Part shown: piece by piece, positions 39,925 through 64,000 of the stretch | Position numbering within the stretch: the first letter of the stretch is position 1 | Layout: every line of letters starts with the position of its first letter | Assembly (NCBI RefSeq): GCF_016432865.1 | Contig: NC_067400.1 | Coordinates: forward strand, 612,746,001 to 612,810,000 | Length of the DNA: 64,000 bases | Source: Antechinus flavipes | Taxonomy: Eukaryota | Direction of reading: 5' to 3' | The notes under the pieces: model-generated | The model's input: the letters and a program-made list of their open reading frames with translations, nothing else | What the model was told of the DNA's origin: nothing | Database searches by the model: none | Translations under genes and position numbers: made by a program

Positions 39925-50235
<10,311 letters not shown>

Positions 50236-50979: not shown

Positions 50980-51540
50980 TCCCCCAACACACTCGTCCTT
51001 GGGGAATCCCTAATAAGCTTCTCCTTACACTCCCCTGACACACTTGTCCCCACACACCCATCCCTCTCAGGCCCCCCGACACACTTATATTTACACTAAT
51101 CCTGACACACTCGCCTTTGCACAATCACAACACACTTATCTTTACACACCCCCTCGCAGGAATCCCTAATACGCTTCTCCTTACACTCCCCTGACACACT
51201 TGTCCCCACACACCCATCCCTCTCAGGTCCCCCTGACACACTTATCTTTACACACACCCTCGCGGGAATCCCTAATACACTTCTCCTTACACTCCCCTGA
51301 CACACTTGCCTTTACACATCCAATGCTCTCAGGCTCCCCTGACACTTATGTTTACACTAACCCTGACACACTCATCCTTGCACAATCGCTCCCGCGAGGT
51401 CTCCCTGACACACTTATTTTTACACTCCCCCGACCCCCGCGCCCTCCCCCGACCCACTCATCTTCGCACGATCGCCCCCGCGAGGTCCCCCTGACACACT
51501 TATTTTTACACTTCGCCGAACACACTCATCCTCAGCCCCT
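50980..51540. repeat. Degenerate composite tandem repeat in SUPT5H intron 1
   Basis: Recurring blocks GGAATCCCTAATAnnCTTCTCCTTACACTCCCCTGACACACTT (near 51003, 51159, 51265) and CCCTGACACACTTAT(C/T)TTTACAC. Confidence 0.75.
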
Positions 51541-51559
51541 CGCCCTCACGGGGTCGCCC

Positions 51560-52150
51560 TGACACACTCGCCCTTACACACGCACACGCACAGCTCCGCC
51601 CGGCCCCTCCAGCCACGGGCCTTACCCCCGGGCGGGTCAGCGTCGCTCACTCCCGGGTTGCGCGGCTTCGGCTCTGGCTCCGGCGGACGCGACGTCAGAC
51701 GAAGCGGCGGCGACGGCGACGGCGGCGGCGGTGACTGGGGCGGCTTATCTCTCGAGAATTCGCGAGAACCGGAACCGCGACCGCCACCTTGGGAAAGGCA
51801 GAAAACAAGCCCGACTTCCGGCCGAAGGGCGCCATCTTAGGAGAGGCATAGGAGACAGGATGTGACGCATTGAAAGGAGGCGGGGAAAGACGGCGGGGTG
51901 GGAGAAGTTGGAGCCGAGGAGGAAAAGACTTCTGAACGTGCTGGGGAGCGCACGTGGGCTCTGGAGCGAGGGGGGGAGGGGTGCCCGTGACGTCACAGAA
52001 GGGCCAAACCCCCCCCCCGGGGGGGAGGGGGCCGAGGGGCCCGAAGTGCAACTTCGCGTGCGGCGTCCCAGATGGCGGAGCCCTCCTTTTGTGCATCGCC
52101 GCTTGCTGAGAAGCTGTTTGCCTTTCCTTTCTCAAAAAACGCTCATGCCC
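51560..52150. promoter_or_regulatory. SUPT5H CpG-island promoter and non-coding first exon
   Basis: Candidate donors after 51651 (GTGAGC) and 51626 (GTAAGG); ETS CCGGAAGT near 51814-51821; YY1-type AAGATGGC 51838-51831; full CRE TGACGTCA 51988-51995. Next exon acceptor at 50256. Confidence 0.75.
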
Positions 52151-57729: not shown

Positions 57730-58030
57730 CCAGAGCAAAGCAGAAACCAAAGCCATCTCTCAGGGTCAAATCTGGCCTTGGCACTGAATAGCTGTGTGAC
57801 CTGGGCAAGCCCCTTCACCGTTTGCCTTGGTTTCCACATCTGTAAAAACAGCTCTCCACCCAGGCCCACCCAGCCAAGAGCTTGTCCTGGAGCCTCCTCC
57901 CTTTACCGCAGCCACAGTAGTGCAAGTTCCCAAACTTCAGGGACAATCTTTGTTTTTTTCCTATTTGTATCCCAGGACTTAGCATTTAAGAGTGAGGCAC
58001 TTAGTAGGTGCTTAATAAAGATTTATTCAT
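57730..58030 (+). mobile_element. MIR and L2 3' fragments
   Basis: GCTGTGTGACCTGGGCAAGCCCCTT...CACATCTGTAAAA and GCACTTAGTAGGTGCTTAATAAA. Confidence 0.6.
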
Positions 58031-59632
58031 GGACTGACAAGGTTAGAAGGAGTGATGATCCTTAGAGCAATTAGATGGAATCACCATCCATAAGGGCAGT
58101 GACCCCGGCTCTGGACAGGGACTCCACCTTTGGAACCTTGTCCTGGGGAGGATGGCATGACCTGCTGGGGCTCCCTCCGGGGGCATCTGGCAAAAGTGCT
58201 AGGCCATGACAGTGGCCCAGCTAGTTAGGTGAACTGGTTGTCTCCTCCCTCCCGGCTCCGGTGCCATGATCGCTCAGGGTAAACAGCCACAGTGGGTTCT
58301 AGGGGGGCGGCCCCTGGGGACTCCCTTATGGCCCAGCACAGGCTTGGCACTTTAGAAAAGGGTAAGGGCACCTTTCCTCCACCTCCTTCCTTCCTGCTCT
58401 TTGCTATCCTAGGGCCTCTTGATCTGGCCTCCCCACAGTATCAGAGACAGCCCCTAAACCTGGGTGACCTCGTCAGCCTCGCTCTTCTCTCCCCCACACA
58501 CGTAAGGCAGCATCCCATCCTTCCCACCCCCAAAAGTCTTGGGCAATAATTCCAGGATCCCGGGGACTTTTGTCCCCTGTGAACTGAGGGGAACGTTGTT
58601 TTGAAACTGGTCAATTTGGAAGAACAGTGATAACTGGGAGGAAAAATAATTGCTTTGTGTGGGCTTCAGAAACGAGCCCCCCTAAATGTGATTTTCCACG
58701 TGTCCACGCTTGCTGGGTCAGTCACAGTGAAGGCCCGGCCTCCAACCACAGTCCAGGAGGCAGGACAGGACGGGAGGAACCCACTCGGCAGCCTGGTAGC
58801 CTCGGCAAAGGCCCGGAGAAGGCAGGACGGTCGCAGGAGGACTTGTCCAGGGTCCCTCAGCGAATCCCAGAAGCCCAGCCTTCTTTCCACTCCAACACGC
58901 CGGGCTTCGAAGGACGAGTGGGTGAGATGTGGACAGGGAGAGTTAAGTTAGCGGGGGTCACTTGAGGAGGAACCCGGAGGGCAAGGGAGCTGAGGCGGGA
59001 ACCCTGGCACCCCCTTTGGGGAGGTGAGCGGTGCGGCGTGGCCGGAGGGAAGAGATGGGAGCAGGAAGGAGCTAGGGCAAAGGAGAGATCACTCCTGACA
59101 CTTAAGTGCCAACTCAGTGCCTCGCCGAGCGCCGGGGGCTCGTGAAAAGTGGGCACAAAGGGGCACTGGAGGAAGGCCGCGGGCAGAAGGAGAGGGCGAT
59201 GGCAGTCACAGCTGCCTGTGGACAGGGCCGGGCTCTGAGCTCAAGCCCACTCCTCCTTCTCGCCAGGGAACAAGCCCCTGGTCCCCGAGCTCCGCCTCCG
59301 GCCCCGTCTAGGACCCGAGGCCCTCCCTGCAGGGGTGGGTGCCCCATTCACCTCCTCTCTCTTCTCTGGGACTTCCCTAGTTCCCACCCGCCCTCGGGCC
59401 TGCTGGCGTTCCAGATGTAGAAGCAGTGACGGGACCCCAGAAGCCGAGGCTTCTAGAGCCCAAAACTAAGGGCGGAGGTAAAAACTGGGGTGTCAAGACC
59501 GGATTAAGGGAGACCCTTTTCATTCCCCCACTTCCGTCCCCTCCCTGCTTCCCTGAGGGATACCTGGGGACGTCTCCGGGGAGCGGAGGGCTGTGCGCTG
59601 AGGAGGGTTGGGGCCGGCTTGGCCATGGCCCC

Positions 59633-60573
59633 TCACCCAGGCTGATGGGCTCCAGCACAGGCCACCTGCAGCAGCTCCAGAAGTTTGGCCAAGAACTGGG
59701 GGACAGGCCTCTCGGGGTGCCCCTCGCAGAGGGGGCAGGGTCCCGAGGCAGCTCCCCCCCTGGGTCCCCACAGGTGGGACCCCAGGTGTTCCAAGGAGCG
59801 CTTCAGCCGGTTCACAGTCCTCCCTGTCAGTGGACCCTCCTCGTAGCCAATCACAGACAGTTCCAGGGCAAAGCAGTGCAGAACCTCCTTTGGGCACACC
59901 TACAGAGACCGCCATCTCCGTCCTGCCCTGCGGCTCCCCGGGCACAGCCCCAGCCCCATCCCATTCTGCGGCCTTCCCCTGGCGGGCCCACCGCCTCCAT
60001 CCTGCCCCGGGGGGCTTCTAGCAGAGACGCCCGACTAGCCACGCCCTCCCGAGGGGCCCCATCATGGGCCCAAACAGCGGCTCCTCAAAATGTGCCCCCC
60101 AAGACCCCAAACTGCCAACTTGAGGCACATCCCCTCCCAAGGCAGGGGACTCCAAGGGAAAGGGTGGGGGGGGCGGGGACACTTGCCTCAGACCCCCCAG
60201 GGCCAACAGGTTTGCCTCTTCTTAAGGGCCCTTTCTCCTCCCCCCCAAATATCAGAGAGAAACGAGGGTCCCCCAGGGGAAGGGGACAAGGCCGAGCATA
60301 CTCACAGAGAGACTGTCCGGAGTATAGAGGGTCCCATCATTTCTACTGCCCTGGGATTGGAGGGGGCAAGAGCTGGCCACCGGAAGGTCCAGGCTTCGCT
60401 TCCAACGCGCCTGCCATCCCTCGCCCCCTCCCGGCCCCACCAGCCTGCCCACTCACTAGGTCCTCCATGATAGCTACGAGTCCCTCGAAGGGCTCCCAAG
60501 GGCAGCTGGGGGGCCCCAAATCGGGGCCCCCCACGGAATGAGTCAACACAAGGAAGGCCCAGAAGAGCCACAT
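59633..60573 (-). CDS. IL15L: Interleukin-15-like cytokine (IL-15L), 3 coding exons, 142 aa, intact ORF
   Basis: Exons 60573-60457 (117 nt), 60350-60306 (45 nt), 59899-59633 (267 nt), phase-0 GT-AG introns. Protein: MWLFWAFLVLTHSVGGPDLGPPSCPWEPFEGLVAIMEDL-GSRNDGTLYTPDSLS-VCPKEVLHCFALELSVIGYEEGPLTGRTVNRLKRSLEHLGSHLWGPRGGAASGPCPLCEGHPERPVPQFLAKLLELLQVACAGAHQPG. Signal peptide; D.TLYT, C...CF.LEL.VI..E.G and C..CE......FL motifs of IL-15; the 45-nt exon equals the IL-15 D.TLYT exon size; location next to SUPT5H/RPS16 fits the known IL-15L locus. Confidence 0.92.
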
Positions 60574-62172
60574 GAGGGGTGGCAGGGAGGGGAGGGCCAC
60601 CCATCTCCCCGGCCTAGGGAGCAGGGAGACTCAGGCACCTGGAGGAGACAGAGGGGAGGGACAGGGTTAGAGTGCAGGGGGGAAGGGCAGCGTCCTGAGA
60701 GCCTGCGGTGCACAGACGCCCCCAAACCGCAGGCGGAGGTGTGCCGGGGAGACCTTAGCTTCCGTGCCCCCCCATCCCGTGTGCCAGGTTACCTGCCACA
60801 TGTCGGCCCTGGTTCAGGCAGCCGAGGCATCTGGGAGGGCAGGGGAGAGAGCCCCCTCCCTAGCGGGAGCACTTGCCCGCCTCAGTTTCCTCCTTTCACC
60901 TGGGGGGGGGGGTCCTACTTGGGCTGGGCTGTGCAAACCTTCCTGCTAGCTCTTCTGCACTGTTTGGCTCTGCGTCCTCTGTCAGCCCAGGGCTCACCAG
61001 GCGGGGGCCCGGCCACCTTGGGGTCCCTTTCTCTCCCCTCCCCACCCCGTCACTCACTCATCCTTGCATCTAGGGGGCTCCTCCGCTCGGCTTCAGCTAG
61101 GAATGACAAGTGGGCGGTTTCTGGCTGGACTTGGAGGCAGCCCCTCCCCAATCCGGCCGGGCAGCCGGAGAAGGTGAAGTGCCGGACGTCATCGGGGCGC
61201 CAGGGATACATGGACACACCCCCTCCTACCTTTGACCTCCCTGGGGAGAAGAGTAAGCTAGGGAAACTGAGGCGGCTCAGAGGAAGAGGTGCCCCCCTCC
61301 CCCCGACCGAGCAGCAGGGACGGGAAGGGCTGGCAGGCTTCTTGGGGGGAGGGGCTCGGAGGGGGCTAATTTGGGAAGGGAAGACCTAAGTGAGTTTGGG
61401 GAGAAGGGTCTTGGGGGGGACTTGAGGAACTCTAAAGCGATGGGAGACGAGGAGGAAGGAATCTTAAAATGGAGAGGGTCCGGAGCAGGGAGGCGGTCTT
61501 GAGGGAGGAGCCTGGAAAGGTCTGGAGGCAAGTCTTGGGATCCGGGGTGTGGGGGGAGTCTTGGGAGCAGGGGGAGGGAGGGGCCTGGGAGGACTCGGGA
61601 GTGTGGAATGGGGGGGAAGAGAAGCTGGAGGCAGAAGTCTTGGGGTTGGGGAGCTGGAAGAGGCTTGGAGTCTTAGATTGGAAGAGTTGGGGTGCGGATC
61701 GGAGGTGGAGGGGTAAAGGAATCTTGACGGGGGGAAGGTTGGGGAGAGAAAAGAGAGAGCAAGGCAGGAGTTGGGACTGATGGGAATCTGGGAGGGAGGG
61801 AGTCGGCTAGGATTGGAAATGGTAGGGGGCGGGCTCAGGAGGTAAATGATGGGAGACTCAGCCAATAAGGACCGACGTCACTTCACGCAGCTGGGTTATT
61901 GGTTCCTCCTTCGTATAGAAAGGTCAGGCTCCGCCCCTACCGTAAAGTGCCACCGCCGTACTTCCCAGGCCCTGCCCTCTTTCTCCGCTGACTGGCTTTG
62001 CCGAGTGTCTGCGCCTGCGCAAACTCTGGAAAACAGCCCTCGCCTCCGCGCCCGTTCCTTTCGTGCTTCGGCGCCGCGCGGGTGAGGAGCTCACGTCTCC
62101 AGCTTCTGTCGCCGCCGCCACCGCTTCCGCCGCCTCCATCCCTGCTCTGCGCCCGCGTCGCCCATCGACAGC

Positions 62173-63797
<1,625 letters not shown>

Positions 63798-64000
63798 TGA
63801 CTCCTTTAGCTCTCCCTTCATCTCTTTTGGGAAGAGAAAAGGCAAAGGCAACCCCAGCTCCCTTGCTTTTTTCTGCTCAGAGTGAGGGGGGCGTAGCTGT
63901 ACCTTCTGTTAAGACATTGAGCTAGAGCAAGGTGGCCCTCTGTGCTTATGAGCTAATCAGTGGAAGACATCATTCCTCCACTTACTCATTACCTTTGGAA

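What the first reader, a model, noticed from the sequence alone, without database searches (positions are those of the whole stretch)
59633..60573. Intact IL-15-like cytokine gene
Seen: a 142-aa ORF over three phase-0 exons, with four IL-15-type Cys, an extra Cys pair (SCPW, VACA) and IL-15Ralpha-contact-type residues (TLYT Tyr, LEL Glu, YEE, CEG). The helix-D Gln is present, while Leu replaces the helix-A Asp that IL-2/IL-15 use for IL-2Rbeta. No intron separates the helix B-C and helix D coding regions, unlike IL15. Established: IL-15L is a third IL-2/15 family member, inactivated in human and mouse and intact in some mammals. It is easily missed by annotation; I cannot tell whether it is already reported for this species.
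Basis: partly seen in the sequence, partly recalled or inferred. Interest (0 to 1): 0.8.

Follow-up and report, generated by a model that had tools for sequence, protein, structure and literature searches.

The report
Marsupial IL-15-like cytokine gene, already known

Summary
On the minus strand, three phase-0 coding exons (60573-60457, 60350-60306, 59899-59633) with canonical GT/AG sites give a 142-aa secreted-type protein. It is 91% identical to a Tasmanian devil protein built from the same three exons, and 63-65% identical to rabbit and pig proteins named "interleukin 15-like".

It sits where IL-15L is defined to sit, between RPS16 (next to PLEKHG2) and SUPT5H. It has the tetrapod-specific fused exon 3/4, the two family cysteine pairs, the IL-15L-specific extra pair, and the Tyr/Glu/Glu residues that contact IL-15Rα.

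dN/dS against the devil gene is 0.13 (p 2e-9). Contigs from two small, RNA-like public runs of the same organism join the exons exactly at the predicted splice sites. Four samples show only one coding variant, and it is synonymous.

Dijkstra et al. 2014 (PMC3894449) already described all these features and showed opossum, wallaby and Tasmanian devil IL-15L. The gene is therefore already known.

Minor new details: a conserved out-of-frame upstream ATG that overlaps the weak-context start codon, and a conserved intron in the 3'UTR starting 69 nt after the stop. I did not establish where the transcript ends.

The parts
60457..60573 (-). IL15L coding exon 1 (CDS part): signal peptide, first Cys of the IL-15L-specific pair (SCPW) and helix A, 39 codons; donor GTGAGT at 60456
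   Evidence: the joint 60350|60457 in run X4 ends exactly here; same exon in the Sarcophilus protein P0002
60574..60638 (-). 5'UTR part of the first coding exon. The exon starts at 60638 after AG at 60640-60639. It holds an out-of-frame upstream ATG at 60604-60602 in strong context (GAG ATG G), which opens a 51-codon uORF that overlaps the weak-context main ATG
   Evidence: loose ends at 60638/60641 map to upstream exons; uORF computed; ATG, spacing (-31) and acceptor are conserved in Sarcophilus
60306..60350 (-). IL15L coding exon 2, 15 codons (GSRNDGTLYTPDSLS) carrying the LYTP motif with the Tyr that contacts IL-15Rα
   Evidence: joints on both sides in RNA-like contigs; amino acids identical to Sarcophilus; aligns to IL-15 DATLYTESD
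59633..59899 (-). IL15L fused 'exon 3/4' (CDS part, 88 codons plus TGA): helices B, C and D, four family Cys, the second Cys of the extra pair (VACA), and the LEL/YEE/CEG Glu and LLQ Gln
   Evidence: joint 59899|60306 in X2 and X4
59564..59632 (-). 3'UTR stretch of exon 3/4, ending at a splice donor (CAG|GTATCC, GT at 59563-59562) 69 nt after the stop
   Evidence: a contig piece spans exactly 59564-59899 in X2 and X4, with a loose end beyond it; the donor is identical in Sarcophilus
58905..59563 (-). intron within the 3'UTR (659 nt)
   Evidence: the loose end at 59564 maps uniquely to 58877-58904; AG at 58906-58905
58840..58904 (-). start of a downstream non-coding exon; its 3' end is unknown. 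It lies in a block 96.7% identical to Sarcophilus
   Evidence: flanking non-coding identity is 79-87%
60793..60852 (-). alternative 5' non-coding exon ending at 60793 (donor GTAACC); start not determined; contains two further upstream ATGs
   Evidence: loose end at 60641 in X2 and X4, sequence read, uATGs, donor conserved in Sarcophilus
61058..61117 (-). alternative 5' non-coding exon ending at 61058 (donor GTGAGT); start not determined
   Evidence: the loose end at 60638 in X2 maps to 61058-61084; 90% conserved in Sarcophilus, donor included
62173..63800 (+). neighbour RPS16, head-to-head with IL15L: exon 1 starts [16 protein letters not shown] at 62173, and a second exon lies at about 63660-63800
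   Evidence: in Sarcophilus a Ribosomal_S9 gene holds the same position and orientation
41947..45755 (-). neighbour SUPT5H, downstream on the same strand; sampled exons carry the KOW5 and NGN domains
   Evidence: SUPT5H follows IL15L in Sarcophilus; the loci are colinear

Best explanation
This is the orthologue of interleukin 15-like (IL-15L), the third member of the IL-2/IL-15/IL-15L family, in a marsupial that is closer to the Tasmanian devil than to the dunnart. Shown here: an intact 142-aa ORF in three coding exons, the defining genomic position, all family and IL-15L-specific sequence marks, purifying selection, and spliced transcripts. Inferred from published work on cattle and trout IL-15L: the protein is a secreted short-chain four-helix-bundle cytokine. 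It probably binds the sushi domain of IL-15Rα through the conserved Tyr/Glu/Glu patch, depends on IL-15Rα for stability and export, and is presented to a type I receptor pair, probably one containing the common gamma chain. In trout this drives STAT5 phosphorylation and type 2 (IL-4/13) responses. No mammalian function has been found yet. Output is probably held low after transcription, by a strong out-of-frame upstream ATG overlapping a weak-context start codon and by an intron in the 3'UTR.
For: Gene model and splice sites. Homology: exon 3/4 alone matches solved IL-15 at E 1e-3 and Pfam IL15 at E 1.3e-3. A family profile matches IL-15 at E 2.6e-8, ahead of IL-21 at 1.6e-3. The Sarcophilus orthologue passes the Pfam IL15 cut-off, 30.1 against 28.5 bits. 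Orthologues: Sarcophilus 91%, Sminthopsis 85%, bilby 'interleukin-15-like' 75%, pig 'Interleukin 15-like protein' 65%, rabbit 'interleukin 15-like precursor' 63%. Synteny: DLL3 and TIMM50, SUPT5H, then IL15L, then RPS16, with the same order in Sarcophilus. IL-15L is defined as lying between PLEKHG2 and SUPT5H with a fused exon 3/4. Cys pattern and IL-15Rα motifs. Selection: dN 0.039, dS 0.304, ratio 0.13, bootstrap 0.05-0.26, Fisher p 2e-9. Of nine single-base variant positions seen in four samples, one is coding and it is synonymous (60306). Transcription: joints 59899|60306 (X2, X4) and 60350|60457 (X4) with GT..AG ends on the minus strand, absent from the genome-sized runs X1 and X3. Fold: the model has four main helices and its eight best PDB matches are all IL-15. 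Function in relatives: bovine IL-15L binds IL-15Rα; trout IL-15L with IL-15Rα induces IL-4/13 (abstract).
Against: No protein-level or receptor-binding evidence exists for any marsupial. No function has been found for bovine IL-15L. Runs X2 and X4 are not on record as RNA. I infer that they are RNA from their small size, uneven depth and canonical joints. Introns are also covered in them, at about a quarter to a half of the depth over exon 3/4. The start codon context is weak and lies behind a strong overlapping uORF. The dominant form has an exon junction 69 nt after the stop, which by the usual 50-55 nt rule (my knowledge) would favour nonsense-mediated decay. The structure model has low confidence (pLDDT 61.7) and the Foldseek E-values are weak, 0.14 and above. 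dN/dS rests on one species pair.
Confidence: 0.93

Rival explanations
1. The exons are transcribed mainly as part of a leader or run-on transcript of the neighbouring housekeeping gene SUPT5H, as in the human IL-15L-pseudogene/SUPT5H hybrid cDNA. Under this reading little or no IL-15L protein is made, and the ORF is a relic on its way to the pseudogene state seen in many placental mammals.
For: Exon 3/4 splices onward from a donor 69 nt after the stop to a conserved exon at 58904, in the direction of SUPT5H. I saw no AATAAA or ATTAAA in the roughly 240 nt read after the stop. The 5' exons start within about 1 kb of the RPS16 start. A strong overlapping uORF precedes a weak start codon. A human hybrid cDNA and non-coding rabbit transcripts are on record.
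Against: dN/dS of 0.13 with p 2e-9, and 55 of 56 conserved columns kept, show selection on the protein itself. The ORF is intact in at least eight marsupial and monotreme species. Polyadenylated IL-15L mRNAs exist in cattle and rabbit. Upstream ATGs are normal for functional IL-15 and IL-15L. Continuation into SUPT5H was not observed; it was simply not tested.
Confidence: 0.05
2. It is IL-15 proper, or an IL-2 or IL-21 paralogue, rather than IL-15L.
For: The nearest solved structures and the only Pfam family hit are IL-15.
Against: Identity to IL-15 is only 23-30% over the structural alignments. The locus is the IL-15L locus next to SUPT5H, not the IL15 or IL2-IL21 loci. The fused exon 3/4 and the extra Cys pair are IL-15L marks. 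All close hits are IL-15L orthologues.
Confidence: 0.01
3. It is a chance ORF, or an artefact of the reader stitching exons together.
For: None beyond the GC-rich context, which produces many long spurious ORFs on both strands.
Against: Independent annotation in Sarcophilus uses the same three exons. Spliced contigs confirm both introns. E-values reach 1e-49.
Confidence: 0.01

Closest known systems
Mammalian and reptilian IL-15L (Dijkstra et al. 2014, Immunogenetics 66:93, PMC3894449; rabbit JX271583 and cattle JX271582 transcripts)
   Same: Same locus next to SUPT5H. Same coding structure of three exons with a fused exon 3/4. Leader peptide, six Cys including the IL-15L-specific N-to-C pair, LYTP, the LEL and EE Glu, CEG and helix-D Gln. 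No N-glycosylation sequon, as in bovine IL-15L. Upstream out-of-frame ATGs and a poor Kozak context at the start. 60-65% identity to the placental proteins. That paper's Fig. S2 already shows opossum, wallaby and Tasmanian devil sequences and states that intact IL-15L may be common in monotremes and marsupials.
   Different: Only lineage-level details differ. The C-D loop is four residues longer in marsupials (GPRGGAAS against VTGQ), and there are two extra residues after the leader relative to Sarcophilus. The 3'UTR intron and the downstream exon were not compared with the published cattle and rabbit transcripts.
Annotated marsupial orthologues: Sarcophilus harrisii ACOB8E_018593 isoform 1 (P0002), Sminthopsis crassicaudata LOC141564392 X2 (P0003), Macrotis lagotis and Notamacropus eugenii 'interleukin-15-like' (P0005, P0019)
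   Same: Same exon structure, same splice sites and same flanking genes. Identity is 91%, 85%, 75% and 71%.
   Different: The exact protein of this window is not in the protein collection that was searched, so this species' copy may be unannotated there. Sarcophilus also has an annotated isoform that skips exon 2 (P0001); no such joint was listed here.
Teleost IL-15L (trout IL-15La/b; Yamaguchi et al. 2020, PMC7658486)
   Same: Same family, same IL-15Rα-binding motifs and the same dependence on upstream-ATG-rich leaders. This is the only IL-15L with a demonstrated function (type 2 cytokine induction, STAT5).
   Different: [quoted passage not shown] The sequences are very diverged and no fish hit appeared in the searches here. 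Whether the function carries over to mammals is unknown.
IL-15 (PDB 2Z3Q, 2PSM, 4GS7)
   Same: Four-helix short-chain fold, two disulfides, and the Tyr26/Glu46/Glu53/Glu89 IL-15Rα contacts and Gln108 are matched in alignment.
   Different: Different chromosome locus. About 21% overall identity (published figure). IL-15 keeps the intron before the helix-D exon, lacks the third disulfide and has long-leader isoforms.

Membership tests
IL-15L (interleukin 15-like) | Gene maps between PLEKHG2 and SUPT5H (PMC3894449) | tested here: met
   SUPT5H exons lie downstream on the same strand and RPS16 lies immediately upstream. Sarcophilus has the same order, with a further 1109-aa gene beyond RPS16. PLEKHG2 itself lies outside the window and was not identified by name.
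IL-15L (interleukin 15-like) | [quoted passage not shown] | tested here: met
   One 267-nt exon (59899-59633) encodes helices B, C and D. The rule is stated.
IL-15L (interleukin 15-like) | [quoted passage not shown] | tested here: met
   Cys24 and Cys135, plus Cys56/63/109/112. All six columns are conserved across 16 orthologues. The feature is described. The disulfide bonding itself was not tested.
IL-15L (interleukin 15-like) | Family motif LXTP, F44, D/E89, Q108, and the IL-15Rα key residues Y28, E47, D/E54 (numbering of PMC3894449) | tested here: met
   LYTP, HCF, CEG, LLQ, LEL and YEE are present and placed on the IL-15 equivalents by the profile alignment, and are kept among conserved columns.
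IL-15L (interleukin 15-like) | Closest sequence relatives are proteins named IL-15L on experimental grounds | tested here: met
   Rabbit 'interleukin 15-like precursor' at 63% and pig 'Interleukin 15-like protein' at 65%. IL-15 itself is only detectable at E 1e-3.
IL-15L (interleukin 15-like) | Intact ORF under purifying selection, with transcription | tested here: met
   dN/dS 0.13. Spliced joints in X2 and X4. The RNA nature of those runs is inferred, not recorded.
IL-15L (interleukin 15-like) | Protein binds IL-15Rα and needs it for surface display or secretion | not testable with these tools
   Shown only for bovine and trout proteins.
Pfam PF02372 IL15 domain | Score at or above the gathering cut-off of 28.5 bits | tested here: inconclusive
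   The window's exon 3/4 alone scores 19.3 bits. The full-length spliced protein could not be submitted by reference. The 91%-identical Sarcophilus protein scores 30.1 bits, and 13 of 17 alignment members match.
IL-15 proper | IL15 locus and an intron separating the helix-C and helix-D exons | tested here: not met
   The locus is RPS16-SUPT5H and there is no such intron.

The most novel reading that the evidence does not exclude
In dasyurid marsupials, IL-15L may be expressed from the CpG-rich region it shares head-to-head with RPS16, as a transcript under conserved double post-transcriptional restraint. The first restraint is a strong-context uORF overlapping the weak start codon. The second is a conserved 3'UTR intron 69 nt past the stop, an NMD-type architecture. 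The downstream exon is more conserved than its surroundings and may link the transcript to SUPT5H. This would be a gated or bicistronic arrangement that has not been described for this cytokine.
Probability: 0.15. Interest if true: 0.4.

Novelty: already known. Interest (0 to 1): 0.2.

Why it matters
IL-15L is one of the few ancient cytokines with no known function in mammals. Humans and mice lack it, so species with a constrained, expressed copy are the only place to study it. This window adds one more marsupial with an intact, selected and spliced gene. That agrees with the published view that non-placental mammals retained IL-15L, and it changes nothing conceptually. Its practical value is for annotation: the gene is small, GC-rich and easily mis-modelled. 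The opossum and wombat UniProt models appear to miss exon 2.

Tried and rejected
1. DNA for more marsupial orthologues, for a multi-species dN/dS: the Sminthopsis and Notamacropus proteins are not on record by exact sequence, and the bilby locus came back without DNA. Selection therefore rests on one pair.

2. RNA runs: none is recorded as RNA. I used the four listed runs anyway, and two behaved like RNA assemblies.

3. Structure: the AlphaFold model of the Sarcophilus proxy is low-confidence (pLDDT 61.7) and the Foldseek E-values are 0.14 or weaker. I use it only as consistent with an IL-15 fold.

4. Helix-A Asp question: HMMER alignments do not reach helix A, and the OCR of the published alignment is too corrupt to count residues. 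I rejected it as evidence of a lost IL-2Rβ contact, because the 2020 paper reports a conserved acidic helix-A residue in IL-15L and the invariant EPF Glu is present here.

5. The full 142-aa spliced protein was not sent to Pfam, PDB or structure tools because it has no single reference. Pieces and the Sarcophilus orthologue were used instead.

6. IL-15 proper, IL-2 or IL-21 identity, and a chance ORF, were considered and rejected (see rival explanations).

Full report
**What is there.**
- Read on the minus strand, the interval 60573-59633 holds an ATG-to-TGA reading frame split over three exons: 60573-60457 (39 codons), 60350-60306 (15 codons) and 59899-59633 (88 codons plus stop). All junctions are phase 0.
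- Both donors are GTGAGT. The acceptors are CCCAG and CTGTAG.
- The product is 142 aa. It has a hydrophobic leader, six cysteines at 24, 56, 63, 109, 112 and 135, and no N-glycosylation sequon.

**Is it real?**
- The last exon alone matches solved IL-15 structures (E about 1e-3) and Pfam IL15 (19.3 bits, below the 28.5 cut-off).
- It finds marsupial proteins at E 4e-49.
- The best hit is Sarcophilus harrisii P0002 (140 aa). It is built from the same three exons, with the same splice-site sequences in its genome.
- A search with that protein returns the rabbit "interleukin 15-like precursor", the pig "Interleukin 15-like protein", bilby and tammar "interleukin-15-like", and wombat, opossum and platypus proteins.
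- Full-length identities of the window's protein are 91% (devil), 85% (dunnart), 75% (bilby), 60-65% (placentals) and 52% (platypus).
- It keeps 55 of 56 columns that are at least 90% conserved in the family. The one change, Q87K, is shared with the devil.
- A profile of the family hits IL-15 at E 2.6e-8, ahead of IL-21 at 1.6e-3.
- The devil protein passes the Pfam IL15 threshold.
- A low-confidence AlphaFold model of the devil protein (pLDDT 61.7) has four main helices, and its eight best PDB matches are all IL-15.

**Which family member?**
- Dijkstra et al. 2014 (PMC3894449) define IL-15L by its position between PLEKHG2 and SUPT5H. In tetrapods they add the loss of the intron between family exons 3 and 4 ("exon 3/4"). 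[quoted passage not shown]
- In the window, SUPT5H exons (KOW5, NGN) lie downstream on the same strand, followed by a TIMM50-type NIF exon and DLL3-type EGF repeats.
- RPS16 exon 1 starts at 62173 on the opposite strand, 1.6 kb from the IL15L ATG.
- The devil locus has the same order: a 1109-aa gene, RPS16, IL15L, SUPT5H. It is colinear with the window at 79-87% non-coding identity.
- All the sequence marks are present. The family-profile alignment pairs TLYT Tyr with IL-15 Y26, LEL Glu with E46, the first Glu of YEE with E53, the two Cys of CPLC with C85/C88, CEG Glu with E89 and LLQ Gln with Q108.
- This is IL-15L, not IL-15.

**Selection and expression.**
- Against the devil coding sequence, dS is 0.304 and dN is 0.039, giving dN/dS 0.13 (bootstrap 0.05-0.26). 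The excess of synonymous change has p 2e-9.
- No run is recorded as RNA. Four runs from one study of the same organism hold the locus.
- Two of them (X1, X3) are genome-sized and contiguous across the introns.
- The other two (X2, X4, about 0.1 Gb of contigs) show uneven depth peaking on the exons. They contain contigs that skip 59900-60305 (both runs) and 60351-60456 (X4), with GT..AG ends on the minus strand. These are exactly the two predicted introns. I take these two runs to be RNA assemblies; that is an inference.
- Among the four samples, the only variant inside the coding sequence is 60306 A>G, a synonymous TCT to TCC change. All other differences and indels fall in introns or flanks.

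**Extra anatomy from the contigs.**
- The first coding exon begins at 60638, behind an AG acceptor. It is joined to either of two upstream non-coding exons, ending at 60793 (donor GTAACC) and 61058 (donor GTGAGT).
- Exon 3/4 does not end in a poly(A) site. It ends at 59564 at a CAG|GTATCC donor, 69 nt after the stop, and joins an exon beginning at 58904.
- Depth drops to intron level beyond 59564, so this is the main form.
- The donor is identical in the devil. The 121 nt around the acceptor are 96.7% identical, against about 84% for the surroundings.
- An out-of-frame ATG at 60604 in strong context (G at -3 and +4) opens a 51-codon uORF. It runs over the main ATG, which has C at -3 and T at +4. 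The ATG, its distance of 31 nt and its frame are conserved in the devil.
- Upstream ATGs and a poor start context are already reported for IL-15L and IL-15.
- I could not determine where the transcript ends, or whether it runs into SUPT5H as the human pseudogene hybrid cDNA does.

- The statement that Leu replaces the helix-A Asp used for IL-2Rβ depends on matching MEDL to IEDL.
- HMMER does not align helix A at all.
- Exon 2 has the same number of residues before the conserved Tyr in both proteins. By my own reasoning on the sequence, an ungapped alignment anchored at the exon 1/2 border therefore puts a Glu on the Asp position. Matching the hydrophobic periodicity instead puts Gly there.
- The 2020 paper calls these alignments "quite speculative". 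It reports that an acidic helix-A residue, a helix-C Arg and a helix-D Gln/Glu are rather well conserved in IL-15L.
- The window has the invariant EPF Glu, the RL(K/Q)R Arg and the LLQ Gln. A lost IL-2Rβ contact is therefore not shown.

**How it most likely works.**
- Shown here: the gene is intact, constrained and spliced.
- Inferred from cattle and trout work: the protein is a secreted four-helix cytokine that binds IL-15Rα, needs it for stability and export, and is presented to a type I receptor. In trout this gives STAT5 activation and IL-4/13 induction.
- No function has yet been found for any mammalian IL-15L.
- The uORF and the 3'UTR intron suggest low, regulated protein output. This is inference only.

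**Comparison and novelty.**
- That paper's Fig. S2 shows opossum, wallaby and Tasmanian devil sequences. It states that intact IL-15L may be common in monotremes and marsupials.
- The 2020 paper lists a bandicoot transcript. Current annotations of the devil, dunnart, bilby and tammar contain the gene.
- The exact protein of this window is absent from the protein collection searched, so this species' copy may be unannotated. That is still only an additional orthologue.
- Verdict: a correct reading of an already known gene, of low interest. The conserved 3'UTR intron and the possible link to SUPT5H are the only loose threads.

Noticed in passing
window 58840-58960 (minus strand); L001 11496-11616: The block around the acceptor of the exon downstream of IL15L is 96.7% identical to the Tasmanian devil, against about 84% for the surrounding non-coding DNA. 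It may be a constrained exon or regulatory element lying between IL15L and SUPT5H.
   Followed up: partly
window 60602-60604 and 60574-60638: A strong-context, out-of-frame upstream ATG lies 31 nt before the weak-context IL15L start and opens a 51-codon overlapping uORF. Position and frame are conserved in Sarcophilus. The alternative 5' exons add two more upstream ATGs each.
   Followed up: yes
window 61058-62173: IL15L and RPS16 are head-to-head. Their start codons are 1.6 kb apart, and the IL15L 5' exons begin within about 1 kb of RPS16 exon 1, in GC-rich DNA. A CRE-like TGACGTC sits near 61190 on the minus strand. They may share a promoter region.
   Followed up: no
proteins P0004 (Monodelphis) and P0006 (Vombatus): These UniProt models lack the TLYTPD exon 2 and begin exon 3/4 three codons early, with SLQ, which is what the end of the intron translates to in Sarcophilus. 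The 2014 paper shows that opossum has a normal exon 2, so these models look mis-spliced.
   Followed up: partly
protein P0001 (Sarcophilus isoform 2); window 60306-60350: An annotated devil isoform skips exon 2 in frame and so removes the Tyr that contacts IL-15Rα. No such joint was listed in the contigs of this species.
   Followed up: partly
alignment A1, columns about 111-118 (window protein residues about 99-106): All marsupial IL-15L proteins have a C-D loop four residues longer than the placental and platypus proteins (GPRGGAAS against VTGQ).
   Followed up: no
window 51030-51570; L001 19430-19850: Several overlapping BLAST matches at 68-74% identity point to a tandemly repeated, GC-rich stretch just upstream of the first SUPT5H coding exon in both species.
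   Followed up: no
window 58010-58040: A MIR-like SINE fragment (…AATAAAGATTTATTCAT on the plus strand) supplies an AATAAA on the minus strand at 58027-58022. This is the first canonical poly(A) signal I saw downstream of the IL15L stop. It was not tested as a real 3' end.
   Followed up: no
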